From NCBI RefSeq assembly GCF_037042905.1, contig NC_087249.1:4092001-4156000 (forward strand): a stretch of DNA of 64,000 nt, read 5' to 3'. This DNA is from Lytechinus pictus. Lineage: Eukaryota. A model generated the notes under the pieces. The model was not told where the DNA came from. It was given only the letters and a program-made list of their open reading frames with translations, and did no database searches. Position 1 is the first letter of the stretch; every line of letters begins with the position of its first letter. Of this stretch, positions 3,313-25,102 are shown in pieces. The position numbers were made by a program, and so were the translations under genes.

Positions 3313-6188
3313 TTATGGCCAAACAATAACGGGAAGGCTGTGTCTGTATTTCCTGAGTGTAATCGCAGCGGCAGCCACTGCGACAGTGAGTAGACCTAGA
3401 ACAGCGAAAGCTACGCCAACACTACGCCTGGATGAGCCCGTTGTCCTCTTCAACAACCGATCCGTATTCCTTGCCTCAAAAGTCAAACCCTTACCACTAC
3501 CTCTGAGAATCGGTAGAACGTTACCACTTATCTGATGGCGGTCACCTCCCACCATTATTGCTTGTCTGTTATCAGCATCGACATCGTTGACGAGGGCCGT
3601 GTCCATACCAGCGTACATATAGACGTCTTCTTCGGAAGACTCAGAATCACCCCCATCGTCTCCAGCGAAGACACCAACATCAAATCCACCACCACCGCCT
3701 CCACCACCACCACCACCACCACCTGCTGAACCGCCTATGCTCGAATATGCTGGTGCTGACATCCCAGCGTACGTTTCAGTCATGTCAGTCTGATCGAAAG
3801 GAATATCAAACAGCGTTTGCCGGGCTTCTCTTGTCTTCCCAAGCCCCCGCGCGTCAGACAGCACAAAGCACACTGTATAAAAGAACAATCACATGGAAAC
3901 AGGTTGCATAATTGTATGATAATATCAATGGAAAGGTTATACATGCACATGATTTTATGCAGATATCGCCATTTTTCAACTTTAACAAATCTGTTCGGGA
4001 ATCTCACCAAGAAGGCTGCAGAAGAAGGGTGACCAACTGGGAGGACGGTTGCTCCCCTCACTCTCCCTATTTCCAGGGCTAAAGGATCCCTTTAGCACCT
4101 CTGCCTCTGCCTCTTCCCGACATTGGCTCACACAGCTCTTGGTCATTCTCTTCTCTGCGGACCTCGAAGTTGATTATCATATCACCAAGAAAAAAAAACC
4201 ACCCATAACATATCACTATCTTTATTTCATAATGTTCCCTTTTGCCTATTCTTCATGTTCTTGAATTTAAGTGCCCATCTGCGCCCGTCGGAAAAACCTA
4301 TGGTATAAACCAAGAGTAACCTCAGCGGACTTAATTAACACAGATTGAATGTATAAAATTTTAGATGTACAGCTGCTATATCAAATAATAATTTAAAAGA
4401 AAATGATGAGATAAACCTGCTAACATTGCTTCATTTCTTTCCCAACTTCCTCAATTGCCCGAACCATACGTCCTTCTCGTGCCAAATGTCTTGCTTCTTT
4501 ATTTTACACCTATGCACACACACTCAGCATTATCTCCACCATTGATAGCTGACGATATAACTTTTTAGTTGCAACAATTATAAAATTTTAACTATGTAAA
4601 TTTATTCAATAAAACATAACTGAAACTAGGACCCCGTTCTCATTACAATTCTCAAGAAACTAGTTTAGTGGAAACCGGTCCAGGAAGCCAGTTTTGAAGA
4701 TCGCTTTGATAGCCATGATAGCGTACCCATCTGATCTGACCCGAGAGTCAAGCGGCCTTGCTGCTACGGAAACACTCTCAGTGGGGTGATATGTTTCTGC
4801 GCCCCAAATGACGAAAACAATCGCAATTTGAACATATGAGGAGGGAGCATGTGCATCCCTGCCCCCTTGATTGCCTAGACAGGTAGAATTTAAAAGCCTT
4901 TGCCAAGTTCATCTTTGAAAAGGCGTCCTGTTCTCGATGATTGAGATATACCTTTGTGGTTTATGACTCACCACATTGATTTGGGAATGCCGAGCTAGAT
5001 GAAACGATCGAACTACTAGTACTCTAGAACCAATGATCTACCGTTTGAAGTTCCCAATAAGAGCCAATAACCCCCATAACCTGAATATTGTTGTCTTGTG
5101 TGCCCCATATTATGTACGGTGCAGGGACAGATCTGAATGGAAGGGGGAGAACACAGACATTTCCCGACATTTTTTTGAGAAGAAAAAAAAAATTATCATA
5201 TCCATATCTGGAGCAGAACCTTTCCAGCACACACACAAAAATGACAAGCAAAAAAGGTGTTCACTCTCGGGATCCATTTTCATCGCTTCAAATGACTGGG
5301 GAGGGGGAAGAAGAAATTTAGGGACCACTTTATATATATCTGTGTACAACTTTCGCCAAAGTGGGGTGGGGGAACGTGTCACCTGTGCCCCTCGCAATGC
5401 TCACCTAACATGATGGCTCGTTAATTACTAATAAGGACAACCTCCTCTTAAGTATAGGAGATCATCAATCTCATGAGGCCCAGTCAACAAAGATTTTTTT
5501 CATGGAACGTTCTGCATTTTTTTGCACCACGTACAGTTCAATCGCTGCTTGATCTACACCCTCTTTGTCGAATTAACGTTTGGTCTCATCCCACAAGGTA
5601 GAATTCTATTCCGTCAACAACTTCTGCTACTTACGATTTGATCGAATGCAACGGACACGGAAGCCGAGCTGACCCTGGCTTTCAGGAACCGGATAACAAT
5701 TTCGGGATTATATTCAAAAGCTGATCATTCAGCTTTTGGAACAAAAGATGCGGGAAGCTGATGCCTTTTGAATGGAGAAGACGCCTTACAATTTAGCCCA
5801 TTTGCAATTTTGTCTTATTTACTGTGGCCTTTGAGCTGTTATGAATCAAAATTTCATTTGACAAAGTGCAAAATTGTAAGTAGACAAACTACAAATCAGA
5901 CCATGCGAGCATTAGAATAACAGTTATTTCTAGTGAGACCAAATGATAATTAGATTTTTTAAAAATAGTAGACCTTTTACGAATTAGACCATCTGCAAAA
6001 AGGTGGATACAAATCCACAACAGATGAGACTGAAGAAAGGTAATAGCAGTTCATGTAAAAAAAAAAAAAACAGTACCCATGATGACAAAACAAAAATATG
6101 GAATATTAATTTAAAAAACATTCATATCTTAACTCAACATACCAGACACAATCGCAGCGAGGCAGATGACATTGAAGGAAAAAGCCAT
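3313..6188 (-). CDS. P16-related acidic Gly-rich type-I membrane protein (gene 1); complement(join(3313..3872,6143..6188)), 201 aa
   Basis: Exon 1 ATG at 6188 encodes MAFSFNVICLAAIVS+G then GTATGT. Acceptor ttcttttatacAG precedes 3872. The phase-1 join gives signal peptide MAFSFNVICLAAIVSVCFVLSDA, then RQTLFDIPFDQTD, G13, DDGGDSESSEED, TM SVGVAFAVLGLLTVAVAAAAITL and tail RKYRHSLPVIVWP. Confidence 0.88.
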
Positions 6189-6350
6189 TGCTAATTAAGC
6201 TTTAAATACCACAAAAGTGAAACAATGATGCGTGCAGCCAAGAAGCACACCATAGGCATACAAAGGTAAAATGGTGTCCTCACTAGTGATGCCCTCCTCT
6301 CTACAAGCGATTGCAGATTCCGAACTGAGGTCTTAGTTGAAAGAATTATC

Positions 6351-6392
6351 TTTTAAATATCACTTCACTTTCTTGTATTGGGGTACTTCCTG
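6351..6392 (-). promoter_or_regulatory. Candidate gene 1 promoter: TATA-like TATTTAAAA plus Ets site CAGGAAGT
   Basis: On the minus strand, ATATTTAAAA at 6351-6360 lies ~165 nt upstream of the ATG; ACTTCCTG at 6385-6392. Confidence 0.45.
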
Positions 6393-6439
6393 CATCCAAG
6401 GGGGCAATTACATCACTTTCAATCTTTCAGATTCGAGAT

Positions 6440-6622
6440 GAAAAGAGAGAAAGGAGGGAAAGAGAGCCAGAGAGGGGAAGGAGATATTGAAAGAGAGAAG
6501 TTGATGAAGAGAAATGCAGAAAACGTGAGAGGCAGATGGAGAGAAAGAGAGAGGAGAAATTAAGAGAGATAGGAGAGAGATGGGGAGAGACAGAGAGAGA
6601 GGGAAAGAGGTAGGAGAGGACA
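6440..6622. repeat. GA-rich polypurine tract upstream of gene 1
   Basis: Direct inspection. Confidence 0.75.
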
Positions 6623-8859
6623 AGAGCCTTGTTCGGAAGTAAGTTACATTTTCTTGGCATCGTTTGACATACTTAATAAAAGACTTTTACTCAAAAGTTG
6701 CTCGGATATATGAGAGGAAAAGCGAAATAATGTTCTGACTATTCCACTAAAAAACATACATAAGATGTGTAAGCCACCGATAACCTCATGGGAAAAGTTT
6801 TGTTTTTGACAGCAGTGGTAGCGTGCCAAGTTTAAAAACTTTGTGATTCCCCGACAGTTTTGAGGCCATGCAGTGGGAAAAATTGATGGTAGATAGATAA
6901 TAGATAATATGCGTACTTTGCTGAAAAAAGGCTTTATGGAAGCGAAGTTGTAATGATGATGATAATGATGATGATGAGAATGATATTCATATTACGAATA
7001 TCGAAACAATAGTAATGATAATACTAATTATAACATCAACACCAATGAAAAAAAAAAGATTAATATAACAATATACAATAACAACAAAATATCATTAAAC
7101 CGTTTTATAAGTGTAGAGCGGTTGATGTATCTTTTTACCTTGCATGCATACATCATGGGACGTCTATTCATAATATTGCATTTCATTTGCATCTAACCGG
7201 GCACCCATTTTAACACCTGAGCGGAGAGGGGCAAAATGTTGGTAAACGTCACTAAACGAATGTAGCAATTACCAGACACTCATTGAACACCTAAATATGA
7301 AGGGTGAAAAATCTATCTTGCAACAAGGGCTCCATTCAACACCTGGACGTACAGTGGCGAAATTGCAGAATAACATCTTACCCAACAAAATAAACGAATA
7401 CAATCTACACAAGTGATGCAGTGATGTTCGCACCCCTGGATTCGTGGGCAACGGTTTCGATACTTTTCACCTGATCCACCACAATGCTGATAAAAAGAAC
7501 TAGCTGAACAAATAGGCTGAGGAAAGATAATCAAAAAGAAGTTTTATAAAGATATATCATATCATATCATAAGAACAGAGAAGAAAATACATTCTAAACT
7601 GGGAGAGCAGAGGAGATGGCAATTAAAACGATTGTAGTCATACATTGCTTTGTTCAAAATATTAAAGAACTAGATAAAACCGGCAGGCAAATTAGGATTC
7701 GTAAACCCCAAAAAATATTTTCCCCATCGAAGTTTGCAGATGTTACGGATGTATATATGAACTTTACATATTTTAGTCTGATTATTTTTTTATGGAAATA
7801 GTGTCACACTGTTATAAAACGCGAGGAAAGACTTATGACCTCTTTCTTCGGCACTCCATAATATAAGGTATCTCATAAATGCTAAGATTTTAACGGGCTA
7901 TATATGTTTGTAGGTTTATTTCTTATTGCCAATTTTTGATCAGATTCTTTTTGTTAAATGCAAGATTATTTTTTCCATCCAAAACCCTTGCAACTTGTCA
8001 TACTTCATTTCTTTAACGTTGATTCTGTAGAAACGGGTTAAAATCATGTGAATGGGGAAATTATATTGTTTTTGTGAAAGTTGGCAACTGTGAGGTTGTT
8101 ACCCCTGGTAATGGAGTCATGGGAGTGCAATTCCCAGGGTATAGAGTCTATAGGGTACGTATATTGTGAGATGTGCCTCTTTGAGGGGGTACTTCCATCG
8201 AGTTTGAATAATGGTCTACAGATTTGTCAAATACATGTATGAGCGTTATCTATCTATCTAATTTTCCCTTCTTCTCATTCTTCTTCTTTTCACACTCTAA
8301 CAAAAATCATTTTGGGCGACTTATTGTTGATTTGGGGATGGTATGTCACATACATGTATGTCCTCATAAAACATGTAAAAGCAAAATGCGATTCTCAGTA
8401 AATGGTGATATTATCATAATCAACTTTTTATAAAGAAATAATACAGGACCACTACTAATGGCGTCACCGTTGCCCAATCGTTATACCTTATTTATTGTGA
8501 TTACAACCTTTTGCATCTTAAATAATAACAATGTTAGAGTTATTCCATGTTTTCGACATACATTTTTACTTGTCGGTTCTTTCCTTTTCTTTACAAAAAG
8601 CAACTTTGGGTAGATTTGCCTTTAACTTGTTTTGAATTTTCAAATATATGACTCACATGCACCCTGGGAGGATGGAGACCTAATGCTCAATATGATTAAA
8701 GAGCGTTCGATATTGTTTTTATTGGTTAATATCACATGAATCAGTATGAAACAATATAAGCCTAATCAGGAACAACCCATCTCTTTCTCTTTTTCTCCTC
8801 CCCCTTCTCTCTCCATCTCTCAATTTTACTCTCTCTCTCTCTTAGACCACGGACCTTAA

Positions 8860-9432
8860 AGAGATCGTTTCACTTTGTGAGCAGCTGATTAAAAAAAATT
8901 ATCAAACTAAGATGAAACATGAGTATGAGTACCTGTATTTGTCCTCAAAACCCTGAAACAAACCACAATATGGGATGAAAAACTCTAATTCAGACACAAG
9001 AAATAATTTATTAGCCTGATTTTGAGTAACTGTCTGTAAGACGCATTCAACTTATATGCCCAGTTTTCCCCAAATTCAAAAAGTCTGTTAGCTGTGTTGT
9101 CTACTTTCTGCTGTGTGTATCATTCTCCTATGCACACACTATTTTAGCTGCACTGCGCATTTGGTGTACACATAGTATGTAGGTCATGCTGGTTTCATTT
9201 AGAGTTTGTTCGTTGTGGTGCACACATTCGCTGCATACACATAGTCATTGAAGCCAACCCCCAATTACTTTCAAACTTTGGTTTACACCTCCAAGGTTTT
9301 AAAATTGTTCTTTTAGATATGATATTTTGAAACTTTTGTGATTGTATCTTGACACTATAAGCCTAATGTTTAGCTCATTTTCAAGAACAAAAATGATATT
9401 TTTTTTAATCAGAACAAAGTGAAATGATCACT
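8860..9432. mobile_element. Kolobok-like (TTAA-target) MITE
   Basis: TTAA|AGAGATCGTTTCACTTTGT ... ACAAAGTGAAATGATCACT|TAAA; 17/19 TIR match. Confidence 0.7.
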
Positions 9433-10289
9433 TAAAACCATACAATGTACCCTTTCTATATTCCTTTGTCTACATATTACATTAATCTTTATCCTCTCAT
9501 CGCGATGATTTCGACGTTCTCCATCGCAGTACATATTTCATATGTCTCACCTCTCTTTTCTATCAGAAGCAGTGCCCGTCCGTGTGTTCACTCACCCCCT
9601 TGTTAGTTGTTACAAGTCGTCACCCAAAATCATATTTTGATCCATCTTACTTTCTACATCTACGGTGGTCTGCTCTGACCCTAATATCGCCCTCTTTGGT
9701 TTGCAGGAGGTATAGTTTTATTGCAAAAAATACGACTTCAGAATAGTCGAATGATATAAACTCTGTGCAGGTAAGAAACTGGTGACAAGACAATAAGCTC
9801 CTGCGACTATTGCTCCTGTCCTAATATTTAAGAGGGGGTTAGGTAAGCGTTAGGATTGTAATGGAGTTTTTTGTTTCAGAATGATGTAAATAGAAGGATT
9901 AGGGTTTATTTAGTTTTGGAGGTTGGAATATTGCTCTAGTCTATGTCTATGAACACTTCATGCACAGAACCGAATTAAAGTTTTAGTTTTAATACTGTCG
10001 TGTATCAATCATATTTTGTGATTATTTACGTCCCGAAGACGTAACCAGGGCTCGAATCTCTCCATCACTTTGTAACTCCCCTCATTTTGCTTAGATTACA
10101 GGCGCACTCCGGACATCGGATTCTGGCTTATCAGCATTCGGTACATGTATGCACAATATCCACTCCCTAGGAAGTATTCCATCATTGATCAGTAAAGATG
10201 CTCTAATTGCTAAGCGATATTGACTTAAGCATTCTACCTGTTACCAATGTGCTATGCAATAACCGGCACTAACTCACTGATATCTAATA

Positions 10290-12203
10290 CCTTGGTCACA
10301 TTTGCTACGGCCGCCGTAGATTCTAAAATTTCTACGGCGAGTAGCAATTCTACGGTCGCCTCAGAATTTCCACGGCCACTTACTCTAGCGGTCACATATG
10401 TTACGGTCGCCGCACGGCGTATTTTTTAATTTTTGGAGAAAAAAAATCTGCTGCTGACGCATGTCCTTGAAATCATGACGTACGGTCGCCCTAGGGCGAC
10501 CCTACCCTGGCCGTAGGTTTTTGACAAATACTACGGCAGACGCGAGGTGGCCGCAAGGCGCCATCACGGCGGCCGCAGGGGAACTATACAGTGAGTATAC
10601 CATGAATTGCTTGTCACACTCATATTTTACATTAGACATTTTATTTCAGAAAGATTTCAAAGTGTCGCACCATGCCCATGCGCGTATTCTGGGTGGGAGG
10701 GAGAAGGGGTTCGGGGCCAGTGCCCCCGGGTAGGCGAAAAGGGGGCGCCAAAAAGAGGGAGGAAAGAAAGGGAAAGAAAAGGGAAATAAAAAAGGAGGGG
10801 GAAAGAAGAGAAAGAGAAAAGGGAGAAAAGAAAGAGAGAAGGAAACAAGAAGAAGAGAAAAGGAGAGAAGAGAAAAGGGGGAAAGGGGGAGTAATAAAAG
10901 TGGGGGGGGGGGCAAATTGATGTTCGACCTAGGAAGGGGGGTCGCCAAATTAATGTTTGACACTGATCTGAATATTATACGATCAGTAATGTTCGACCTA
11001 GGAAGGGAGGGGGGGGGGGCAAATCGACCTTTGGGGTGATTCGCGCTTCGCGCTCGCATCGAATGATTAGTTAGATGGACATCCTGTTAATGATTACCTA
11101 AATTGCGTAGAATGTCTAGTTTTGGAACGAAATATAAAAAAGGTTCAGCTCGCGCTTCGCGCTCGGATCGAATAATTTTTAAGTGCCCATCCTGTTCATG
11201 ATTACCAATAATGCTTAGAATTTCCAAACTTTGGGTCATTTTGGAATATAGACAATTTTCAGCTCGCCCTGACAGATAGAGAGATACCCATCCTGCTCAT
11301 GCTTACAAAACTTCTCAGAATATTCTATTTTCAGGTCTATACACAAGCTATCAAAAATCGCGCTCGCATAATTTATTTGGACTTATGAAATAAATCTCCC
11401 TTAACCATGTTAACTTGTTTGTATGAATAAAGTTAAGATGTTAATAAACGCTTGAGTCTTAAGTAAGAACTACACCCTAAAAAACAACAAAAATCAGCAT
11501 TTAACTCCCCATGATAATACTAATAATAATGATAATGATAATAACGTCATATTTTACCCCAGTTAGCTGCTGGTGAAAGGGCAATATCTGTGCTTCCTGG
11601 TCACATTTGTTCTTTAAAAAAAAGTGGTATTACATCATATTCATGGATAGATTACTTTTTATCAAGTCATCATTAAAGAAGTGGTCTGCAGTTGCCCTTT
11701 TTCATGTGATTATGAAATAAGATAATTCAACATGCATTCAAGGCACCTGTTTGCCTGACGAGGAGGGGTTGCCATTTTTTCTGAAAAGTACACATGCATA
11801 TGGGCCAAAATTATAGGTAGGGCCCCGAGGTGCAAAATTCTAAATACGCGCCTGGTGGCTCCCGAGCAGATAACACAAAAGGAGAAGGGGAAAGGAGGGA
11901 AGAAAAACACGAGGGCAGCCGCACGGCCACCGTATGCTCGACGTACGGCCGCCGTACGGCCGCCGTAGACCGTTCTACGCCATGCCTACGGCTAGTCTAA
12001 TTTCTACGGCGAGCGTAGAAAAGAAAAAATGTTATAACTCCGCGTTAAAATTCTGCGGCCACCCCTACGGCCTGTAAAAAGAAGGAATCCGCCGTACGTT
12101 GACCCTGCGGCCACCGCAGATTTTCTGCGGCTGCCGCAGAAATTTCTCGAATTCAGGTATCTACGGCCGCCGTACGGCCGCCGTAGAGCAAATGTGACCA
12201 AGG
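10290..12203. mobile_element. TA-flanked non-autonomous DNA transposon with TACGGCCGCCGTA palindromes and a large nested insert
   Basis: TA|CCTTGGTCACATTTGCT ... AGCAAATGTGACCAAGG|TA, a perfect 17-bp TIR. Same family as 59040..59197. Confidence 0.85.
10677..11854. mobile_element. hAT-like non-autonomous element(s) nested in 10290..12203
   Basis: Termini CATGCGCGTATTCTG / CTAAATACGCGCCTG resemble the 1148 element. Internal GA-rich tract and CGCGCTTCGCGCTCG motifs. No TSD found. Confidence 0.5.
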
Positions 12204-13066
12204 TATAAATTGAACGCAGAGAGTGGATGTGTGTCTTTGCTGCGGTAATACGTAGTTTTCGCATTTACTACGGGGACATTCACTACAACGTATCGATTCC
12301 TTTGAAAATGCAATTAAAATCACAATAGAGAGCTGATAGGCCTGGGACAGCAGATCATGCGAAGCTTTGCACCAGACGAACAATTGCAAATATGTCGTAG
12401 TCTAGAGTCAAAAACCTCTCAGCTCTCCATTGTGATTTGACTTGTATTTTCAAAGGAGTTGGTGCGTTGTAGAGTTTCCCCGTAGTGAATTATTGACAAA
12501 GTTTTTTTTTGTTCTTTGTTGTCATAACGGGAACTTGCTGCATGCAGCATTGTGGGCAAGCGGAGGAACCCCATCATCACAAAATTCACCCAAAGTGTGC
12601 ACGAGATCCTTCAATTTCGCTTTATAAAGTACAAAGCGCCCCAGAGACAAGGTCGGTCGCTTCGCTCCCTCGCCTTCGAGTTACTTCGAGAAAATCTATG
12701 TTTCTTGCACCCCAAACAAAAATATTCTGCATACGGCCATGCCCGCCTGTGAATACCAAAGAAAAAAGAAACCTTCATGATCATAGCATTTAACAGTATA
12801 TGTAATTCACCTGTTTAGAAGGAAGTCTAGTTTGGATTAACAATGATTGACTTGACAAAACACCAATATGCTATAAGTTTTCTTCTCAGAGTTCAAACGT
12901 AATTCGAATAGAGAAAGACGCAAGTGCCTAACTCTGCCAAATATTGTGTGCATTTAACGCCTCTATTGGCACTCAATATGGCAATAACTTCCTCAAAAGT
13001 CCGATTGTTCATTATGAAGGGAAACAATTTGACACTGATCTTTCAGTGTTGCCAGACAAAGTTGGG

Positions 13067-13200
13067 TCATGGTGTGGTAGCTCAGTGGTAGGGTATCGGA
13101 AGTATATGTAGGCGTGTAGTCGGGATTCAAATCCAAGTCGATCGGTTTGGGCAATTGGGTATATTGGTTATGATCCTTATTGAGAAGTCCATCTTGGTCG
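13067..13200 (+). mobile_element. Decayed tRNA-derived SINE head
   Basis: A-box TAGCTCAGTGG (13078-13088) and B-box-like GATTCAAATCC (13124-13134); no complete cloverleaf. Confidence 0.5.
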
Positions 13201-13893: not shown

Positions 13894-13900
13894 TATAAAA
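13894..13900 (+). promoter_or_regulatory. TATA box, gene 2
   Basis: TATAAAA 115-145 nt upstream of the three in-frame ATGs. Confidence 0.55.
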
Positions 13901-14036
13901 AGAAGTGATTCATCTCCCCAATCGGTCTACATGGTCTACGGGATTCTCAGGGTTGTGCCATTTAAACAGGAAACGTTCTAGTTGTGACATTAATTAGTCG
14001 AAGTTATACATGGAGAAAGTAAAAATGGCGGCGTCG

Positions 14037-16360
14037 ATGAAGTTTTGCACCCATCTTTCCATCACGATTACTTTGTTTTATGGTGAGTACGCCATTCATG
14101 AGCTCAGTCTGGCATGCGATGTATAAATTATCTTCAGACCGATTTCCAAATGTTTCCCTATTTCGTTGTTAATGTTACTATTTTTAATTGTCTTACCATG
14201 TCATACATGTCATATCCAATACTAATTTTTGCGGCCCAGGACATGGATCTGAATAGTCTTTCATGTATTGCGATGCCTCCATTTACACATTTTACACAAA
14301 GTATTTGCAAACTTATTTTATCAATCCATTATAGTGAAAGAAAGCCAATGTTTATGGGTGATGTGATATCTCACGTCATTATTATGAAAATTGATTTAAA
14401 GTGAGTTTATATATTTTGATAGTTGATGATGAATTGAGAATAGGCACCTCGTATGGTATATCGTGAAAGATCAGAGACACGAACGGTTATCCTTGGAATA
14501 ATGGGTTTTTAACATTAATTTGAGGTTGTATATCGTTGATTGCCTGTACCAGAATAGTTTATATTGATAGCAAACTTACTATGAGGATGATCCTCAGCAA
14601 CGGGTTCTTGTCATTTTAGGGAGGATCTATCAATCTTGAAAGGAAATTGGTTCATCGCCGTGCTTCATCAAAGGCTTTCCGCTATCGAGAGATCGCTAGG
14701 GTCATTTTCACCCCAGATTTTCTCATTTAAACGATTTTTACTTCACTGCAGTCATTATTGTTTCTAAACAATTTATCATTATATTTTTCATTTTTTTTAT
14801 ATTAATGGATATAGGGGAAATGCGAAATTTATTTTATTGAATATCAATTTGCAGATGAATTGCCGTTATATATTTGGCGACGATGAGTAGAATTAGTTTT
14901 ATATTTTATCAGTGGGCTAAGGGATGACAAATACCATGAATACCCTACCGACTTAAGCTGCTGCTCGCCACACTAAATCCCGTAATATCGAATATCATGT
15001 GCTATGATTATGAAAAACGTATGTTTTGCTTCTCTTTGATGTACGCTACAATTTTGGTTGGTGTTAATGAAATGCGCAATTGTACTATTTTTTATTGTCA
15101 AATGAATGAATATAGCAACTTGTTTTTTCAACTATATTTCAAAAGAAACACGAAAATGCATAAATCAAAGAACAAATTAACTTGGCAATTAGACAATGAA
15201 TACATGTAATTAATGAAACTTTATGATATAAAAAAGTCGTATTTAAAAAAAAACGGGTAAATGATTCCTTAAAATATATGTTAATCCCTTAACTGACGTC
15301 CAATAATTGACACAGTTCCCTTATGTTAGATCTTTTGAACGATCAATGAATGACAAAACACATATATAAAAAAAAATATTTGCTTGAATTTACATTATCA
15401 TTGTTTTCCAGAAAAAAAACATATATGTAAATATAACCAGTAAAATTGCCTTTTGGTCTACACCCACTTTGTTTAGTTTCCGTTTGGTTTAATTCCACAT
15501 GGTATAATCCTACTTCGTCTATCATCAGTTCATCTACTACCCATTTGGTCTTACGGCTATTTAGCGCTCCTATAATTTTGTTTAATTTGCAGTTTGGTTA
15601 TAAGCATTTTATTCAATATCTTCTTGGTCTAGCACTTAAATAGTTGAACTGTTCATGGATTAAAATGTCTGTAAATTGACAAGTCAAAGTAATCAAAAGA
15701 CGAAGTGGAAATCAAATTCGACTTGATGAAACAAAGTAAGTGTAGTGTAGACCAAAAGGATGAAGCCCATGTGGTTGTAGACTATGACAGAAGTGGACCA
15801 ACTGTTTGAATAATTGAGTAACAATAGTAAATACTTTTAATATATACTGATTATTTTTGTTCTTATTTCAATACCTGACAGCTTTATGTTTGAGGATAGA
15901 GGCGAAGCCAGCCCAAGCCCTCTCGAGGCAAACCGCTGTCAACAATATTCCCCTCGCTCAGACACAGATGGAAATGGAAGCAGATAACGATGTCTATGAA
16001 AGCGACATAGAAGAACCCTCCAACAACGACCCCGAAGAAGCGGACAATGAAAACGAAAACGACATTGAAGTCGAATCCGTTGTCGCTGGCGATGCTGATG
16101 CCGATTTAGATGTGATTGAAGTTGATGCCGGACCTCCAAACCCCATTGGTCGTAACGGATGGACAGGATCTGGATTGTGGAAATCAAAAAAGCGAAACGA
16201 ACACAGCTCCTTGGCCACAGAGAGTAAAGTATCCCACATCGGAATTGGTTTTGGGGTCGTCATCCTCGTGATCGCAGTGGTGGTCGTCTCTGGATTAGCT
16301 ATTAAGAGGCCAGGTTCAAGTAATACCAGTAATATACCTCCCGAACTGAATATAGACTAA
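14037..16360 (+). CDS. P16-related Asp/Glu/Asn-rich type-I membrane protein (gene 2); join(14037..14082,15882..16360), 174 aa (in-frame upstream ATGs at 14010 and 14025)
   Basis: Exon 1 MKFCTHLSITITLFY+G then GTGAGT. Acceptor tttcaatacctgacAG ends at 15881. The phase-1 join gives signal peptide ...ALCLRIEA, then RQTAVNNIPLAQTQ, acidic EADNDVYESDIEEPSNNDPEEADNENENDIE, TM IGIGFGVVILVIAVVVVSGLAI, KR and a short tail. AATAAA at 16383. Confidence 0.87.
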
Positions 16361-18748
16361 GGCTCATATTTGTCTTAAATTGAATAAACAGGTATATAAA
16401 ATCGGAAGATATCAATATATCCCATGTCCTCCTTTCCCCTTCTTAAACCAGCCCTTCCCTCTCTCTCTCTCTCTCTAGATTCCACTCTTTATCTCCTCCC
16501 TCAAATCTCCCTTTCTTTCATGGGATTGCCCGATTATATTTTTATTTGATTACGAACTTGTTTATGAACATTTTGATAAAGATAAATGTATATTATGATT
16601 GAAAGTTTATATCAAATGGATTTAAATCATTATAATTGCTGATATGAGGTGTTTTTATTTGCAGTGGGGAAAATGATCAAGAGATGGAAGCAAGGGAGAG
16701 TAAAAAGAACGCTGTTGATGTTAATGATGATCATAAATGGATGAAGGGAATGATCTTGATGAAAATAGATCTTCTCATAGTGTTAATGCTGTTGAAGATA
16801 AAATTGATAATGATGATAATGAAAAATTATGTTTGTGATTATGAAAATGTTAATGGTGGTGGTGATGATGATGACATTAATGCTTATGATTATACTGATG
16901 ATTTCAATCGCATATATTATGTGTGATTGAAATCATCAGTAGAATCATAAGCATGATGCACATTTCCCATAACGTTAATATGATGATGATTTATTTTCAG
17001 ATATTTTATAAACATCTGATAAGAATTTAAAAAATCGTAACACTTTGATTTCAAAAGTTAAAAATGTCCTTTGAAAGATCTGTTGAAATACCTCATACTG
17101 AAAACAATTAGGTTTTCGGCAACTAGTATATATTTTTTATAAAGAGAGCAAATATGAACCATATAGCAAATAACTCATCAAAAATTATTATGTCTGTATA
17201 TGAGCATTCTCACACGCGGAGAGGTCAAATGGGTTAGAATTGTCAGAATCATAGCAACATAAGTGTTAACAAGCAACTATCATAACTGTGAGACCAATAT
17301 CATTGTTATCCTGGTTGTTATCATCCTTACTTGTCCCAAAGAATTCCTGAGAAAGAGAGAGAAAGAGAGAGAGAGAGAAAGAGGGAAGAAGGGGAGAGGG
17401 GGAAGGGGAGAAGGAGAGGGACAACATATATAGTGCTGATCAATATCGATGAGAAATTGGAAGTCTCTCAAGGAAATCCCTAAATGGCTCTGAATAACTG
17501 GCGTGACCCAGGGCTGTGTCCTTGCCCTTGCCTTATTTAAGCCACGATTTCATTGATATTATCTGTAAATGGCTAAATGCAGAAAACCACTCAAGGAATA
17601 TTTACTTATTAAAGTAAAGTGATTAGCTCGATTACTTTCACTGGACGTTATATAACGACATGACTATTGTCTACGATATTCGTCACTTTTTTACAAAAGA
17701 AAAGTGATAGTATCCCTTAACTATAAGGAACCGTTGACAAACATTGCTCTTGAATATACAGGGATCTTATCATAAGAAAAAAAAAAAGGAAATACTCAGT
17801 TAGTAATTTATAATTTCAGTTAAAAAATTATTAGGTAGTTATACATTTAAGAACTGTAATTATAATTGGTCCTTTTTATATCAACTGAATGGAATGGAAA
17901 TACACACATTTCTTAATGGTTATAATGTGAACAGTGCTCTTCAGTCTACAACGAAATTTTTCATGCACAATTGGTTCCCAGTTGACAAAAATATTGTCTC
18001 AAAGTTAAATCAATTCAAGCTTTGTATTTTCATGGCTAACGTGAATAGTAAGCCTTTAACCCCTTCCCTAACATCGACATAGGACAAAAGATTATTCAAT
18101 TTCTAATAAATTTTGCAATACGATGAGGAAAAGTTATAAAGTGATGGGTAATTTTACAGCCACACCAGAATAACAAACTTCGAACCGACCTAGTTTGTCA
18201 GTCGACGTATATCATTGATCAGTCTGGAATAATTTTTCAGTGATGACTACAACGTCCATCGATGACAGTATTTACATCATTTTAAGATTATTGAATAAAT
18301 TAATCAAACTCCACATAACAAGTCTTTACTTTGATATGCTACGAGATGTGCAATGAAAATATAGCTTCTGGTAATGACTAAACACCGCAGTAAAATTAAT
18401 TGACGGAAGGACATGGAATTCGGCTGTTTTATAAAGTAGCTCATTATAAATGCAGATATAGAAATGACTAATAAGTTTTCTTCTGCAGTCGGCAAATCCT
18501 CATGAAAGTAACGAATCAACATTGCAATATGAATGCAAAGACACGTGGATTAAGATGGAGGATTTAGGGGGATTCGTGCATGTGTCAGGGTGGGAAGACG
18601 TGCCCCCTGAACGCCGGGGCTGACGTGGGAGATAGATGCGACTGTATGAAACAAGGTCAAGGTATAGGATTTGGGTATAATTCTTAGTTGCGAGTTTCTC
18701 TCTTGGATAACAGCTGGATGGTTTGCTTTGATGGAGAATATAATTGCT

Positions 18749-18755
18749 TATAAAG
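18749..18755 (+). promoter_or_regulatory. TATA box, gene 3
   Basis: TATAAAG ~190 nt upstream of ATG 18938. Confidence 0.45.
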
Positions 18756-18937
18756 CAGTGTAAAATTTAGCGGAATCATTAAAGTTTGTTTTAACAACGT
18801 GAGTTATTGGTGTATCTGTGTTGATTCGCTAAGTATAATTCAGTCGTTGCTCCTGATCACAGGGATGAGATTTTTAACCATTCAAGCTTTGAAGAAAAAC
18901 ATTTTGAAGTCAAGTTTGGGGAGTTTTATCAAGCATA

Positions 18938-20213
18938 ATGCCTACGTCTTCAACCTTTCTTTGTCTATCGATAATAGTTCTTGGTGAGTAAATTTCGCTA
19001 GCATTTCTGTTTACTGCTGGATTATTCTGAGAAATAATAATATTTCATCTTCATATGTTTTAATTTCTTCTACCTCTTTTGTTAATAGTTTTCTTCTTTA
19101 AAAAAAAACCGAAAGGCATGCTCAATTGTGAAATAAATGCAAATACCGGAAATTTATATGGCATAAATACAATGTACATAGTCATGATATTCGGCAATCT
19201 CCAAAATAACCAAGAGAGTTAAGAAAATGAAATTTATACCGCTTTTGTAATTTTTGTAGACTTGTCCTCCTGGAAAATTTTCCTGTATGTAATTTGTGTT
19301 TACCTCATGAGACGCCACAAACAAAGAAAACATGATATCTGCCAAGTGAATAAATCAAACTTAATACTTATATATTTCAATTAGGTAAATGATAAATGGT
19401 GGTGATTTTTTTACCTGAAAGCATGAGGATTAATTCCTTGCCAAACGGCACTAGCGCACCAAGTGGGTATCGAATCCGGTCACCGGAATCCGAAACCCCC
19501 GCTCTACCGAATGAGCTATTGCGCCTCCAAGAAGATGGATTAATACATGAATAACGAAAATTGTTAGGTGAGTATTAACTGGATAATGTTTTTTCTTCTT
19601 CCTGTTGTTATCAGTCTTGTGCGCCATTGCTGACGCAAGACCATACGGGAAATATCCAACACCAGATAAACCTGAAAAGCCACATGGACCAGAAGGACCC
19701 GTACAGCCATTTGCCTTCTTGAAGACGTTTGGAGCTGGCTTCGTTAATCCTGCACAACCCAAATCTCCCGCAGCCCTCAACCGTCAAACAATCTTTGACG
19801 GTCCATTCAACCAAGTTGACTACCCTGATCAACCAGACATCCCAGATGCTCCTGATATCCCTGACGCACCTGACGCACCCGATGCACCCGACGCTCCTGA
19901 CGCACCGGACTATGAAGAATACGAGCCTCCTGATACACCAGACGTTGGGGCACATGAAAATCCAGGAGTCTTCTCCGATGGTGGATTCGGTTTTCTCGGA
20001 GGAGCTGCCCAAGCACCTTTCATGATGACTGGTGGTAAATCCCCGAGCTCGATGGGTCAGGGGATGATGACCAAATACAGGAAGGGTTCGAGTTCGGGAT
20101 CTAGTGTCGGCATCGCTTTCGCCGTGCTCGCCATCATTGGTTGCACAATTGCACTGGGGGTTTTCTTTTTCAAAAAGTACAGACACCATATTCCGGTTAT
20201 CGTCCTTAAGTAA
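18938..20213 (+). CDS. P16-related Pro/Asp-repeat type-I membrane protein (gene 3); join(18938..18983,19615..20213), 214 aa
   Basis: Exon 1 MPTSSTFLCLSIIVL+G then GTGAGT. Acceptor ttttcttcttcctgttgttatcAG ends at 19614. The phase-1 join gives signal ...VLCAIADA, then RQTIFDGPFNQVD, (PDx)n, TM SVGIAFAVLAIIGCTIALGVFFF and tail KKYRHHIPVIVLK. AATAAA at 20585. Confidence 0.9.
19415..19528 (-). mobile_element. tRNA-derived SINE fragment in the gene 3 intron
   Basis: GGAGGCGCAATAGCTCATTCGGTAGAGC...GGATTCGATACCC followed by SINE body TTTGGCAAGGAATTAATCCTCA. Confidence 0.6.
19818..19943 (+). repeat. 9-bp coding repeat encoding (Pro-Asp-x)n in gene 3
   Basis: CCT/CCA/CCC/CCG-GAT/GAC-NNN units reading DYPDQPDIPDAPDIPDAPDAPDAPDAPDAPDYEEYEPPDTPD. 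Confidence 0.9.
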
Positions 20214-20757
20214 ATCACCTCCCGCAAATTCGTCCAAAATTTCTTGAAGACTGCCGGACACTCTTGAGAAATTTTTGGATGTACATGATGTATCAATCAT
20301 TATTGTGAGCTTTATTATTTGGCTTGTGACAAGGGACGATGGCATTTATTAGCAATCACATGGACATTGAAACATGCAAGAAGTATCGAGGATATTAATA
20401 GACTCTTAATGAATCTGCAACATGAAGATAAAAATTAATTGATTAATAATTGTCATCCTTTGGTCTGTGTCATCTCTACCCAAATACATCACGTATAAAA
20501 GAGGAACTGAGTGTCATGAATCGTAAATGTTGGAATATCAATGAGCTGGTTTGCCTTACTGTTAATTCTCGTCTACCATGATAAAATAAATTTATAGATA
20601 TACACTACTTGGTTGAATCATACTTTTAAATTGTGATAATTTTGGAGTATTTTCATTTAGGCATAGATTTGATTGATATTTAAATGAAAACAGCACGTGT
20701 AATTATTGTGAAGGAAAATTCGAGACAAGGGGGGGTGAGAATAAGACTAGAGAGAGG

Positions 20758-20796
<39 letters not shown>

Positions 20797-23700
20797 GGGG
20801 GGCGAGGGGTAGACAAATGGGGGAAGGAATAGTGAGACCATCGGGTAGAAGATGGATCAATATGGATTAAGATAGATATATAAAAAAGGTATAGAGTTAT
20901 CATTATGATATCAAGAGATGGAAAAGCTAGAATTGTTGAATAAAAAATGCATGATCAAAATTAATGGTGAAATACAGATGGAGGGAATGGGAGAGAAACC
21001 GAGAGATTTAGGGAGAAAGAAATAGAGAGAGGGGAGACCCTACTGAAACAAAGAAACAAGTGTTACACATAATACACGTACTTAATGTAAGTGTAAATGC
21101 ACCAATCTAACACGTAATGACCTTGGTGTCCGTGTTAATCGGGGCACTTTCACCCAATAACAATGTTCAAACTGAGTATGGAGAGGGTAGAGAGAGAAAA
21201 GGAGAGAGAGAGAGAGAGAGGAGAGAGAGGCGGATAACCATGAAGACAGGAAAAGTGAGCAGGGAGAAAACGAGGCTAAAAGATTTTATAGAATAAACCA
21301 TAAAAATTTAGAATTCTTAACAATATGAGTAGTATCTTAATAAATGCTTGAAGACAAACGGATAAAGAATGTGAGAAGTTATTATGACATACACATCATG
21401 AAATAACTAAGTAGAATTAATTTGAAAACATGATTAGTATGTTGATGTGTTGAACTTATATTTTGAACTGCAAATCAATTTTCAACTTTTCAAGAGAAAA
21501 ACAGGAACTACTTTTTATGATTATGTTTAAAATGTTATGCGAAAAATATATTTATGAAAACCACTGAAAATACTGGGAAAAAATTATGCATGAACAGGAA
21601 ATGGCCATTTGCTAGTAATTTTGTGAATGACAATTAAACATAATAGTAGAATGATTTGCACCAAGCAATGCCAAGAGAACATTGGCAACTTCAGATCTCC
21701 TTACATTTAACGATTTGGGAGAATAAGACGGGTAAGGGAGGGAGGGGGGGGGGAGAATCGAGATGTAAAAAAAGGAGAAACAATTTCGCAATAAAGAGAG
21801 GGAAAATGTTCATACTGATTCAATAATTTATTGCATTTCATAATTTCACAATAAAACGAACTTTTAGGAATATATACATATATATCCGACATAAATATAC
21901 AATAATTATTCAACATGTTCAGTGCAGCATACAACGTGTCGAGATAGAAAATAATTAAACAAAAACAGTCTTTCAAAGACATGAAAGACTCGACTTGGCA
22001 CGAAATTAATCAATCACATCAATCATGTCAATAATGACTAATCATACAAAACAGAGACGCTACAATTAATAACCTGTTTCAACAGATTTAAACGTACGTG
22101 TCAAATTAAATGCTTCGGAATGAATTGTGTGCTGGCCAATAAGAGGAAAAATCCTGAAATATCGTATTTATCGTATGGAAAAATACTCATAATCAATGTA
22201 TTTTCCTGCAATGTCTAATGCTTAGACTGGTTTCTCTGACCTTGTTAAGTATATTGGAACATATCCAACCATTATACTAATAATGTGGCTCGACATTTTG
22301 ACAACACTGCTTAGCTGCATTTTCTGAGGTCGTTGCCAGTTTAAACTGTCTGCATGATTCATCGATATTAATTGTTAGCACTAGACCCATGTTACATGTC
22401 GATAGACCTGCTCAAGTAGCTTATCTTCTGTGAAACTAGAATTATTATGGCCAAAACCTATTGACAATAGATACTGACTGTGTTCTAGCACAAGTTATCA
22501 AAATACGTGTTCAATATCGTCAATAAGTTTGTAAAATTATCCATCAAAATCAACTGATTATGGGTATGATCTTTGGCTTGGTTGTATTAACTAGAAATAT
22601 AAGCAAGTACATATACCTGCAAATATGACCATTACAATTAAAATGATAGTTATTAAAAAGATAAACATCTTATGCTTATATCGTCCCACATACACACGTC
22701 AGTGAGAGTTTCCGTGATTTTTTTTTATCAAGAATGTTTATGCTTGGAGAAAATATAAAAATTATAATACTACAAATCCATATAGGCCTATCATTCTTAT
22801 ATGTGAGTAACCAAATAGTAAGTTTAAAGCAATTAATATGAAAAATCATCGCTTCAAAGGCTATCTGAAATTAGGTGATAGCATGTTTCTTCTGGAAGAA
22901 AAGCTAGAATACACTTAATATTCCACATTTATATTTCATATTAAAACTCTGAAGCGATGAAGAAAAAAATAAACGAATGCTTCTCAGTCAAAGTAAAACG
23001 CATTTCCAAATTCACGAGAATGATATTGTCGAACGTGGATATTTTGAACCCAAGATAAGATGGTTAACGATTAAGTTTATTACGCATAATGCAACGCACT
23101 TTCAGAGATATGTGACAGAGCAACATATTTCTCATTCAGTATTCCAAACATAGTCAAAGTATTGTGACTTAATGGATAATGGATAGACTATCAAAACACA
23201 AAAATTCTAACACCACACAATATATAAAACTCTCTTGTTGGTGGTTGGTAGGCGATTTTAGGTTTTATCACGTGATCAGCTTTGACAAATTGCGGACATG
23301 GCAGAATAGGATTGGTATGATGCATGTTATGTGCTATGTTGGTCACATTTTTCAATCGCTTTATAATTCTTCCCATTGCAGTTGATGAAATATGTCCAAA
23401 ATATATTGTTCCTGGGTTATCCAACTTATACAAAACTGCTTCGTTATGTTAAAACTGTTATGACAAAATTCGAATGTGAGATTATAGGTTTTATAACAAT
23501 CTGATATTTATAAATAATAAATCTGTTGTTCTTGAAATTTTTAGATCATTTAAGATAAAGATAAATCACATCTGCGATGTGGCCATGATGGATGACGTAT
23601 TAAAGGGGGACGCCCTCATCTGTAGGTCGGCATTGCATTATTCTTGCTATCTCCATTCTGTATCTAAAGTGCACTAGTGTGTGTGATCCTAGCGTGTTTC

Positions 23701-24374
23701 TTTAATTGAAATTAGCGGAAAACATGATTGTCCACACGCTTTAAGGTATATACCTATTTAAAATGTGTGTTTTTTAATGATGATCTCAGAAACGTGTTTT
23801 ATTTATTTCTCAATTCTAACGACATTTTTTTAATTGAATGTGTTTACACTAAACCAAAAATGTAAAAATGCCACACATCTTTGTAAGGTCTGTACTACGG
23901 TAATTATGTCTTATTTTCTCAAATCTCATCCCTGTATATCTTATCTGATCGCCCCTATCATCATAGAGGAATGGGGAGGGTGGGTAAGGATGGGGAATGT
24001 AGAAAATCGGCTGTACTTTCATAATTTTTTTCTCTGATATTTGTGAGTCATTAAATTGTGATACTTCATCTGGTATGATACAGCTTCTTTAAACAATATT
24101 ACATGAGTTTAAGTAATTGGTTCGAATATTTTTTTTTTACAATTTTTCCTTTGTGAACTGCATTGTATGAATTTGATTTGAAAGAAAAACAATAAAACAT
24201 TTAAAAAAAAACTAATGTTGTTGTATATTATTTTTAAATAAACATGATTAAGAAAACTGCATTTCTAAAAATGGACTTATATCCTGAAAATCAACTGACA
24301 GCACGTAAACACATGTATCATGGACAACATTTTAATACGAAAGGCACCTGATTTTGGTTAATCACTTAGCTGCT

Positions 24375-25102
24375 CTAACAGTTGGTCATCTTGATGAAAG
24401 GAATACGGAGCTTATTTCTTTTGATGACATACACAGACACTCCGACAGCGGCACCGATCAGAGCGAGCACGGCGAAGGCGATGCCGACACTTGAACTGGA
24501 CGTCGATGCCTTCTTAAGTGGTTCCATTCCAGGGTTCTCACCATTGGGACTGCCAAAGATTGGAAGCTTTCCTCCATGGGCACGGTCGTTGTGACGGTTA
24601 CCCATTGGCTCTACGCCATCACCGTAGTCGCCGACATCAGCTCCCTCAGCACTGACATCGCCTTCCGCTGATGACTCACCAGAGGAACTGCTGTCACCTG
24701 CGCTGCCGCCGGCGTCCATCTGGTTCAAGGGAGCGTCAAACATGTTCTGTTCAGCCGGTGGAGGAATCGCATGTTGGGCCTTGGCGTGTCTTGGGTGGCG
24801 GCCTGAGAGCTTGACGGGATTTGCGTCGACAACCATGCAGTAAGCTGTATAGAATGTATTGAAGTGTAATGCAAAGATAATTAGCAGTATGACATCGGCA
24901 ATTCATTTTTTAAAAATAATTTTCTCTTCATTCATCAGTACAAATAATGATGTGCCCTTTCCGAGACGTATATGTTGTATGCGAGTCACGACAAAGTCTA
25001 CCCTATATTGTAATTAATGACAATTCTTCAAAATCATTTCAAGCGAAATTCTATCGATATTAACCAAATATCAACAAAACAATCATTATGTGGAGGAACT
25101 GA

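What the first reader, a model, noticed from the sequence alone, without database searches (positions are those of the whole stretch)
3784..24752. Conserved 13-14 aa ectodomain motif [RE]-Q-[TN]-x-F-D-x-P-[FL]-x-Q-x-D in genes 1-4, absent from P16
Seen: g1 RQTLFDIPFDQTD (3784-3822), g2 RQTAVNNIPLAQTQ (15926-15967, degenerate), g3 RQTIFDGPFNQVD (19782-19820) and g4 EQNMFDAPLNQMD (24714-24752). Each sits just N-terminal of the acidic tract while flanking residues are unalignable. I recognise no named domain. Inference: this is a short linear motif under purifying selection (partner binding, oligomerisation or processing) that defines a subfamily distinct from P16.
Basis: partly seen in the sequence, partly recalled or inferred. 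Interest (0 to 1): 0.8.

Follow-up and report, generated by a model that had tools for sequence, protein, structure and literature searches.

The report
Signature motif of P16-related skeleton proteins
Four neighbouring sea-urchin genes next to the skeleton-growth gene P16 share a real 13-residue motif; it marks a larger family of small acidic membrane proteins and has been kept since before Diadema and the camarodont urchins diverged, but what it binds or does is untested.

Summary
All four motif copies are at the stated coordinates (g1 and g4 on the minus strand, g2 and g3 on the plus strand). A scoring matrix built only from copies in other species scores g1, g4 and g3 at 34-38 bits, against at most 18 bits in shuffled windows. 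The g2 copy carries a one-residue insertion.

The four genes are two-exon, single-pass membrane proteins. They lie in the same order and orientation in Strongylocentrotus purpuratus. They belong to a family of at least 23 non-redundant proteins in Lytechinus, Strongylocentrotus and Diadema. The scan had already noted a second cluster 6.8 Mb away (s1-329182).

Across the family the core Q-[TN]-x-Φ-[DE]-x-P-x-x-Q is the best-conserved part of an otherwise disordered, fast-diverging ectodomain (P and the second Q in 94% of weighted sequences). P16 lacks the motif, and the family profile does not find P16.

- A second conserved ectodomain island, G-N-x-L-P-Φ, and an SSEE core also exist.
- Between L. 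pictus and S. purpuratus orthologues the whole protein is constrained, and the motif is only modestly better conserved than its flanks (not significant).
- No function is shown.

The most likely role is a docking or recognition site that is kept free of N-glycans. I rate this a real but modest finding.

The parts
3313..3872 (-). g1 exon 2 (end of signal peptide, ectodomain, TM, tail, stop)
   Evidence: ORF; acceptor AG at 3873-3874; syntenic orthologue of S. purpuratus LOC100891699
6143..6188 (-). g1 exon 1, predicted (15 codons plus 1 base, MAFSFNVICLAAIVS, GT donor)
   Evidence: Pattern search; same 15-codon, phase-1 layout as the Sp and Lv orthologues; not confirmed by RNA
3784..3822 (-). 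g1 motif 1, RQTLFDIPFDQTD
   Evidence: 37.7 bits
3505..3528 (-). g1 second ectodomain island, SGNVLPIL
3355..3420 (-). g1 transmembrane segment
   Evidence: homologous segment is a helix in the g4 model
14010..14082 (+). g2 exon 1
   Evidence: 100% tblastn match to residues 1-24 of L. pictus LOC129260588; GT donor
15882..16360 (+). g2 exon 2
   Evidence: 97% identical to LOC129260588
15926..15967 (+). g2 motif 1, degenerate 14-residue form RQTAVNNIPLAQTQ
   Evidence: AVNNIPLAQTQ is identical in the S. purpuratus orthologue
18938..18983 (+). g3 exon 1
   Evidence: RNA contigs that start at 19614 carry 30 preceding bases identical to 18953-18982
19615..20213 (+). g3 exon 2
19782..19820 (+). g3 motif 1, RQTIFDGPFNQVD
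   Evidence: 33.7 bits
19998..20024 (+). g3 second island, weak form GGAAQAPFM
24375..24844 (-). g4 exon 2
   Evidence: splice joint 24844/25548 seen in RNA contigs of two runs
25548..25593 (-). g4 exon 1 (MCSKGKLFCILATLI plus 1 base)
24714..24752 (-). g4 motif 1, EQNMFDAPLNQMD
   Evidence: 37.3 bits
24555..24578 (-). g4 second island, HGGKLPIF
24423..24488 (-). g4 transmembrane helix
   Evidence: AlphaFold2 helix at residues 117-142, pLDDT 93; coordinates
36507..39095 (-). P16 gene (exon 2 36507-36955, exon 1 39062-39095), the comparator that lacks the motif
   Evidence: mature N-terminus matches the Edman sequence of L. variegatus P16 quoted in PMC2758014

Best explanation
The motif is the signature short linear motif of a sea-urchin family of P16-related proteins. 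These are small type-I membrane proteins with a signal peptide split by a phase-1 intron, a disordered acidic Ser/Asp/Glu-rich ectodomain, one TM helix and a short basic tail ending in ...KYRHxIPVIV.

Shown: the motif (extended consensus [AP]-P-x-[KRE]-Q-[TN]-x-Φ-[DE]-x-P-Φ-x-Q-[TEM]) was present in the common ancestor of the family. It has been kept at the protein level in at least eight paralogue lineages since before Diadema and the camarodont urchins split, while the rest of the ectodomain diverged beyond alignment. Synonymous sites within it are saturated. It never forms an N-x-S/T glycosylation sequon.

Inferred: it is an exposed recognition site on the extracellular (or secretory-lumen) side. 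A shared partner protein or modifying enzyme binds it there, positioning the phosphorylatable acidic tract that follows. P16 itself has lost it or never had it, and so would work through a different contact.
For: - Motif present and far above chance.
- Gene models: two exons with a phase-1 intron inside the signal peptide for g1-g4 and P16. The g3 and g4 junctions are confirmed in RNA contigs.
- The exhaustive HMM search of 1.84 billion representatives returns 15 proteins. All have the same architecture and almost all carry the motif. They come from S. purpuratus, L. variegatus, L. pictus and Diadema setosum.
- S. purpuratus has the same layout, g1(-) g2(+) g3(+) g4(-).
- Diadema has four tandem members, including a clear g3 orthologue with PD repeats. 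The tree places it in the g3 clade at 100/99 support.
- Weighted column frequencies: first Q 0.81, T/N 0.81, D/E 0.81, P 0.94, second Q 0.94.
- Between paralogues in the window, 4-9 of 13 motif positions are identical, against 7-10% in the rest of the ectodomain.
- Between Lp and Sp orthologues, pS in the motif is 0.77 and pN is 0.093.
- None of 27 sequences has N-Q-[ST], although 12 have N before the second Q and 13 have S/T after it.
- The ectodomain is disordered in the AlphaFold2 model.
- No Pfam or PDB match.
Against: - In orthologue pairs the motif is not significantly better conserved than its flanks (Fisher p = 0.08 for nonsynonymous changes, 0.24 for identity).
- For g3 and g4 the rest of the ectodomain is just as conserved (84-88% identity).
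- No partner, modification or phenotype is known.
- One Lytechinus paralogue (LOC135154118) and one divergent Diadema member have let the motif decay, so it is dispensable in some contexts.
- The sequon-avoidance count is inflated by shared ancestry. I count roughly 12 independent lineages by eye from the groups (no tool run).
Confidence: 0.6

Rival explanations
1. The motif is an enzyme substrate site rather than a docking site. Its conserved glutamines would be transglutaminase acyl donors that cross-link the protein covalently to matrix, like the N-terminal reactive Gln cluster of vertebrate osteopontin.
For: - Two glutamines are the most invariant polar residues (0.81 and 0.94), and many members have a third in Q-K-Q.
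- A hydrophobic residue sits at +3 of the first Q, the position where TG2 prefers Val/Ile (PMC9363462).
- Human osteopontin is also a disordered acidic mineral-binding phosphoprotein. Its peptides ...PSQK and QNLLAPQNAVSSEE... hold the major conserved TG2-reactive Gln34 and Gln42 directly upstream of an SSEE cluster (PMC4242673). The family has the same order of elements.
- The motif HMM scores that osteopontin segment at 6.3 bits, a score reached by 14 of 2000 shuffles.
Against: - The osteopontin resemblance is weak and was noticed after the fact.
- Position -1 of the first Q is K, R or E, and TG2 disfavours Lys, Asp and Glu there.
- No paper found links transglutaminase to skeletogenic cells or spicules.
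- The invariant Pro and the hydrophobic and acidic positions are not explained by Gln reactivity alone.
Confidence: 0.15
2. The motif is a proteolytic processing site, for example for an astacin/BMP1-tolloid-type protease that cuts before Asp. Cleavage would trim the variable N-terminal piece from the acidic tract.
For: - Many copies end in Q-x-D followed by acidic residues (g1 DQTD, g3 NQVD-YPD, g4 NQMD).
- From my own knowledge, not tested here: BMP1 cuts DMP1 and DSPP at M-Q-x|D-D-P.
- g1 orthologues have R-x-x-R just before the motif.
Against: - The final Asp is present in only 39% of weighted sequences.
- The basic residues upstream are not conserved across paralogues.
- The most invariant positions (Q, P, Q) are not those that define such cleavage sites.
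Confidence: 0.08
3. The motif is a trafficking or physical element. It could be a lumenal sorting signal, or a short hydrophobic-acidic patch that contacts the membrane or amorphous calcium carbonate directly, with no specific protein partner.
For: - It has two aromatic or aliphatic positions within an otherwise highly acidic disordered chain.
- P16 protein localises to syncytial membranes in contact with mineral (PMC2758014).
Against: - A purely physicochemical patch would not need invariant Gln and Pro at fixed spacing.
- It would not need to avoid glycosylation sequons.
- P16, which lacks the motif, still reaches the membrane/mineral interface.
Confidence: 0.1
4. The motif is a passive relic with no function of its own. 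It would be the slowest-decaying remnant of common ancestry, or a patch homogenised by gene conversion, or one constrained at the DNA/RNA level.
For: - The orthologue comparison shows no significant excess constraint over the flanks.
- The genes are tandem neighbours, a setting where conversion is possible.
Against: - Synonymous sites in the motif are saturated between species (pS 0.77) and the paralogue copies differ in residues, so there is no DNA-level constraint or recent conversion.
- The motif persists in at least eight lineages, including Diadema, while adjacent sequence became unalignable.
- Between paralogues it is more conserved than the TM segment plus tail.
Confidence: 0.07

Closest known systems
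P16 (Cheers and Ettensohn 2005; UTMP16 of Alvares et al. 2009, PMC2758014) and the named but little-described neighbours p16rel1 and p16rel2
   Same: - Small type-I membrane proteins with a cleaved signal peptide, a disordered acidic Ser/Asp-rich ectodomain, one TM helix and a short basic tail.
- Same two-exon gene with a phase-1 intron inside the signal peptide.
- Same chromosomal cluster.
- p16rel1 and p16rel2 are listed as genes of skeletogenic cells, and two of g1-g4 are probably these genes.
   Different: - P16 has no motif 1 and no G-N-x-L-P island.
- The family HMM does not hit P16 at E <= 1.
- Profile comparison aligns only 25 columns of TM and juxtamembrane sequence.
- I could not map g1-g4 to the p16rel names, because Livingston 2006 and Rafiq 2012/2014 are not held.
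Osteopontin N-terminal transglutaminase-reactive glutamine cluster (SIBLING/SCPP acidic phosphoproteins)
   Same: - Disordered acidic mineral-associated protein.
- A conserved Gln- and Pro-containing short motif lies just upstream of an SSEE phosphorylation cluster and an acidic tract.
   Different: - Osteopontin is secreted, not membrane-anchored.
- There is no detectable homology (6.3 bits).
- The spacing between the glutamines differs.
- Transglutaminase reactivity of the urchin motif is untested.
Podoplanin and similar small sialomucin-type single-pass proteins (syndecan, TMEM154, glycophorin A, SNORC)
   Same: - Overall layout: a short disordered ectodomain, one TM helix and a very short tail.
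- In podoplanin, a short conserved acidic ectodomain motif (PLAG) docks a C-type lectin. This is from my own knowledge and is a lead only.
- These families are the nearest feature neighbours in the ESM Atlas (scores 0.71-0.78).
   Different: - All Atlas scores are below 0.9, so they are leads only.
- No Pfam match to Podoplanin, Syndecan or the other families.
- The motif sequences are unrelated.

Membership tests
P16-type biomineralisation membrane proteins | N-terminal signal peptide, removed in the mature protein | tested here: inconclusive
   Exon 1 plus the start of exon 2 encode a hydrophobic leader ending in (D/E)-A before R/K/N in g1-g4. Cleavage has been shown experimentally only for P16. 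No signal-peptide predictor was available.
P16-type biomineralisation membrane proteins | Single C-terminal TM helix followed by a short basic cytoplasmic tail | tested here: met
   AlphaFold2 helix at residues 117-142 of g4 exon 2, pLDDT 93. VGIAFAVL... and [RK]KYR are conserved family-wide.
P16-type biomineralisation membrane proteins | Acidic Ser/Asp/Glu-rich disordered ectodomain | tested here: met
   Sequences; SSEE core columns; ectodomain pLDDT about 50.
P16-type biomineralisation membrane proteins | Two-exon gene, phase-1 intron in the signal peptide, linked to P16 | tested here: met
   RNA junctions for g3 and g4. P16 lies 11.7 kb from g4 in the window.
P16-type biomineralisation membrane proteins | Detectable sequence homology to P16 beyond the TM segment | tested here: not met
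   The family HMM gives no hit to the P16 ORF at E <= 1. hhalign aligns 25 TM columns only, probability 81.5%.
P16-type biomineralisation membrane proteins | Expression in skeletogenic cells and a role in skeletal growth | not testable with these tools
   g3 and g4 are transcribed and spliced, but the runs carry no tissue label. Papers list p16rel1 and p16rel2 as skeletogenic genes, but the mapping to g1-g4 is not established.
Transglutaminase glutamine-donor sites (osteopontin-like) | Exposed Gln in a disordered region with a hydrophobic residue at +3 | tested here: met
   Q-[TN]-x-Φ in nearly all members, in a disordered region. The TG2 preference is taken from PMC9363462.
Transglutaminase glutamine-donor sites (osteopontin-like) | Favourable residue at -1 (Gln or His; not Lys, Asp or Glu) | tested here: not met
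   Position -1 is R, K or E in the family. Lys, Asp and Glu are the least preferred residues for TG2 there.
Transglutaminase glutamine-donor sites (osteopontin-like) | Demonstrated amine incorporation or cross-linking | not testable with these tools
   Needs an enzyme assay.
Any named Pfam domain or solved structure | Profile match above the curated threshold | tested here: not met
   All Pfam hits are far below their gathering scores. The motif profile gives no PDB chain at E <= 10.

The most novel reading that the evidence does not exclude
The motif is a conserved enzyme or lectin recognition site that ties a whole family of membrane-anchored acidic phosphoproteins covalently or non-covalently to the spicule matrix. 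Two candidate mechanisms are a transglutaminase cross-linking site convergent with the N-terminal Gln cluster of osteopontin, and a docking peptide for the C-type-lectin spicule matrix proteins, as podoplanin docks CLEC-2. Either would be a molecular link between the skeletogenic cell membrane and the forming biomineral, and a case of convergence between echinoderm and vertebrate mineralisation proteins.
Probability: 0.15. Interest if true: 0.6.

Novelty: new member of a known kind. Interest (0 to 1): 0.35.

Why it matters
P16 is essential for sea-urchin skeletal rod growth, yet how it and its relatives act at the membrane/mineral interface is unknown. This work defines a motif-bearing P16-related family. 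It has at least ten genes in Lytechinus, conserved synteny in Strongylocentrotus and a tandem cluster in Diadema, and it has two fixed ectodomain landmarks in an otherwise disordered chain. That gives experimenters precise, small targets (13 and 7 residues) for mutagenesis, peptide pull-downs and cross-linking assays. It also gives an HMM signature for annotating genes that are currently labelled 'uncharacterized'. It does not by itself reveal a new mechanism.

Tried and rejected
1. A possible fifth motif copy at 29747-29791 (minus strand), from a weak tblastn hit. It contains a stop codon and only FPFDQT, and it is not among the top PSSM scores. I treat it as chance.
2. The first alignment placed LFDVVF of the P16 ORF under the motif. 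That stretch is intronic: the acceptor lies at 36956-36957, so the match is an artefact.
3. The word-indexed protein search gave nothing with the g3 TM/tail region or with P16. The first profile search was swamped by low-complexity words and found only g1 and g2 relatives. The exhaustive HMM search solved this.
4. Proteins P0012-P0014 and P0021 all come from one ENA assembly (ERZ26222911) with no DNA served and no organism named. They could not be used to date the family.
5. Mapping g1-g4 to p16rel1 and p16rel2 failed. LOC identifiers occur in no held paper or supplement, and the key papers are not held.
6. Literature linking transglutaminase to skeletogenic cells: none found.
7. A structural role for the motif: the AlphaFold2 model shows no secondary structure and no contact with the second island.
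Full report
**1. Observation**

The four instances are in the sequence at exactly the stated coordinates. g2 (15926-15967) and g3 (19782-19820) read on the plus strand. g1 (3784-3822) and g4 (24714-24752) read on the minus strand; on the plus strand they give nothing.

To test chance without circularity, I built a 13-column scoring matrix from nine instances found only in other species or loci. I then scanned all six frames of the window. g1, g4 and g3 score 37.7, 37.3 and 33.7 bits. The next best site scores 8.6, and the best site in 20 shuffled windows scores 18.3. The g2 copy has a one-residue insertion (V-N-N in place of F-D) and fails an ungapped scan (5.6 bits). However, its AVNNIPLAQTQ is identical in the S. 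purpuratus orthologue. A weak fifth hit at 29.7 kb contains a stop codon and is chance.

**2. What the genes are**

The window closely matches Lytechinus pictus. g2 is 97-100% identical to LOC129260588, and RNA contigs of one organism match at 99% or more.

Each gene has two exons:
- A short first exon encodes the start of a signal peptide. It has 15 codons in g1, g3 and g4, 24 in g2 and 11 in P16.
- A phase-1 intron follows.
- The second exon carries everything else.

The g4 intron (24844/25548) is present in RNA contigs from two runs. The g3 exon 1-exon 2 junction is confirmed because contigs starting at 19614 carry 30 preceding bases identical to 18953-18982. The g1 first exon (6143-6188) is predicted only.

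The ORF at 36507-36955 with exon 1 at 39062-39095 is P16. Its mature N-terminus (VPGTGTGG..GTDGTQF) matches the Edman sequence reported for L. variegatus P16, a phosphorylated protein found at syncytial membranes in contact with mineral (PMC2758014).

**3. Family and age**

An exhaustive HMMER search of 1.84 billion representative proteins with a profile of g1-g4 and their first orthologues returned 15 proteins at E <= 0.001. All are 125-206 residues with the same architecture, and almost all carry the motif. The named ones come from S. purpuratus, L. variegatus, L. pictus and Diadema setosum.

Synteny and tandem clusters:
- S. purpuratus has the same four genes in the same order and orientation: g1(-), g2(+), g3(+), g4(-).
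- A further member lies about 50 kb beyond g1 there.
- A 21-kb Diadema locus holds four tandem members. One is an unmistakable g3 orthologue with the Pro-Asp repeats and the GPVQPF flank.

A maximum-likelihood tree recovers well-supported orthology groups. It places the Diadema gene inside the g3 clade at 100/99 support. The paralogues therefore separated before the Diadema/camarodont split. By my own knowledge of echinoid phylogeny, which I did not test here, that split is more than about 200 million years old.

L. pictus has more members outside this window: LOC129260524, -526, -527, -528, -529 and LOC135154118.

**4. Conservation pattern**

I used a 23-sequence non-redundant alignment with position-based weights.

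| Element | Weighted frequencies |
|---|---|
| Motif 1 | first Q 0.81; T/N 0.81; F/L/V and other hydrophobics about 1.0; D/E 0.81; P 0.94; second Q 0.94 |
| Second island, [SG]-G-N-x-L-P-Φ | G 0.79; N 0.56; P 0.93 |
| Central core | S-S-E-E, about 0.6 each |

The only comparable ectodomain column outside motif 1 is the Pro of the second island.

Averaging the per-column values by hand gives these figures in bits per column: about 2.4 for the 13 motif columns, about 1.9 for the best acidic-tract stretch, about 1.8 around the second island, and about 2.7 for the TM core.

Among the four paralogues in the window, 4-9 of 13 motif positions are identical. The rest of the ectodomain is 7-10% identical, and TM plus tail is 17-46% identical.

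**5.

For L. pictus against S. purpuratus, summed over g1-g4:

| Segment | Identity | pN |
|---|---|---|
| Motif | 0.82 | 0.093 |
| N-terminal flank | 0.72 | 0.155 |
| Rest of ectodomain | 0.74 | 0.150 |
| TM plus tail | 0.83 | 0.084 |

The difference between motif and flanks is a trend only (Fisher p = 0.08 for nonsynonymous changes, 0.24 for identity). In g3 and g4 the rest of the ectodomain is as conserved as the motif (84-88%). The whole protein is under purifying selection (dN/dS about 0.15-0.2).

Synonymous sites in the motif are saturated (pS 0.77). The constraint therefore acts on the protein, not the DNA, and recent gene conversion is excluded. The special status of the motif appears only at the deeper, between-paralogue level.

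**6. Relation to P16**

P16 has neither island.
- The family HMM does not hit the P16 ORF at E <= 1.
- Profile-profile comparison aligns only 25 TM and juxtamembrane columns.
- An apparent alignment of LFDVVF in the P16 ORF is intronic sequence.

Kinship with P16 rests on linkage, identical exon structure and architecture. 'A subfamily distinct from P16' is therefore a fair description.

**7. Nature of the motif**

- No Pfam family reaches its threshold.
- A profile of the motif finds no PDB chain at E <= 10.
- AlphaFold2 with the 22-sequence family alignment predicts only the TM helix (residues 117-142, pLDDT 93). The ectodomain is unstructured (pLDDT about 50-60), with no contact between the two islands.
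- ESM Atlas feature neighbours are generic small single-pass proteins: podoplanin, syndecan, TMEM154, glycophorin A and SNORC. All score below 0.9, so they are leads only.

The motif is thus a short linear motif in a disordered ectodomain.

One further regularity: 12 of 27 sequences have Asn before the second Gln, and 13 have Ser/Thr after it, but none has both. The motif therefore never forms an N-x-S/T sequon. Allowing for shared ancestry, I count roughly 12 independent lineages, and this still looks non-random. That lineage count is my own tally by eye from the groups, with no tool run. The pattern suggests the site must stay free of N-glycan, as expected for an exposed recognition surface in the secretory pathway.

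**8. Mechanism**

- **Shown:** an ancient, protein-level-constrained, unstructured motif of fixed spacing on the extracellular side, upstream of a phosphorylatable acidic tract.
- **Inferred (most likely):** it docks a shared partner.
- **Rival, transglutaminase substrate site:** the invariance of two glutamines, with a hydrophobic residue at +3, recalls transglutaminase glutamine-donor sites (PMC9363462). It also recalls the conserved reactive Gln34 and Gln42 of osteopontin, whose sequence ...PSQK QNLLAPQNAVSSEE... has the same order of elements (PMC4242673). The similarity is weak: 6.3 bits, reached by 14 of 2000 shuffles. The -1 residue is unfavourable. No paper links transglutaminase to skeletogenic cells.
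- **Rival, protease site cutting before the final Asp:** weakened because that Asp is present in only 39% of weighted sequences.
- **Rival, passive relic:** contradicted by saturation of synonymous sites and by retention in at least eight lineages.

**9. Novelty**

p16rel1 and p16rel2 are named in the literature as genes of skeletogenic cells. I found no description of this motif, of the second island or of the size of the family in the searchable library. The primary papers (Livingston 2006; Rafiq 2012, 2014) are not held, so prior description cannot be excluded. I rate this a real, well-supported family signature of modest interest. It is a useful handle for experiments rather than a new kind of system.

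Noticed in passing
window 3505-3528(-), 16127-16147(+), 19998-20024(+), 24555-24578(-): A second conserved ectodomain island, [SG]-G-N-x-L-P-Φ, lies about 25-35 residues before the TM segment. Its Pro is present in 93% of weighted family sequences.
   Followed up: partly
motif 1, positions 10-12 (for example window 3787-3795(-), 19809-19817(+)): The motif avoids N-glycosylation sequons. Twelve of 27 family sequences have N-Q-x and 13 have x-Q-[ST], but none has N-Q-[ST].
   Followed up: partly
window 19821-19943 (+): The g3 Pro-Asp repeat tract varies in length. RNA contigs of a related organism carry a 9-base insertion (GACGCACCC) after 19871. S. purpuratus has one more repeat unit and Diadema a much longer tract.
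   Followed up: partly
L004:4214-4714 (-), Diadema setosum: A divergent tandem family member starts its ectodomain with RQTQVEVD but lacks the Pro and second Gln of the motif. Its tail (RKRRG...) looks more like that of P16. It may be an intermediate or a P16-like gene, but BLASTP against P16 is not significant and its branch in the tree is long.
   Followed up: partly
outside the window: L. pictus LOC129260526, -527, -528: There are three near-identical 182-residue paralogues with KQTMFDIPFDQT, which implies very recent tandem duplication. The L. pictus orthologue (LOC135154118) of S. purpuratus LOC105443730 has let the motif decay.
   Followed up: no
window 53349-56449 (+): A run of overlapping long ORFs repeats a unit of about 40 residues (..FRHGLMLQTVHRRVYKSLHFDTD..). 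It looks like a tandem DNA repeat array that happens to stay open in frame.
   Followed up: no
The family HMM gives only a compositional hit (E = 0.029, 10 bits). It is not a member of this family.
   Followed up: partly
cytoplasmic tails, for example window 3316-3354(-), 20172-20210(+): The C-terminal tail [RK]-K-Y-R-H-x-[IF]-P-V-[IV]-V-x-x ends the protein in most members. Its conservation approaches that of the TM segment. It is a candidate cytoplasmic sorting or docking signal.
   Followed up: no
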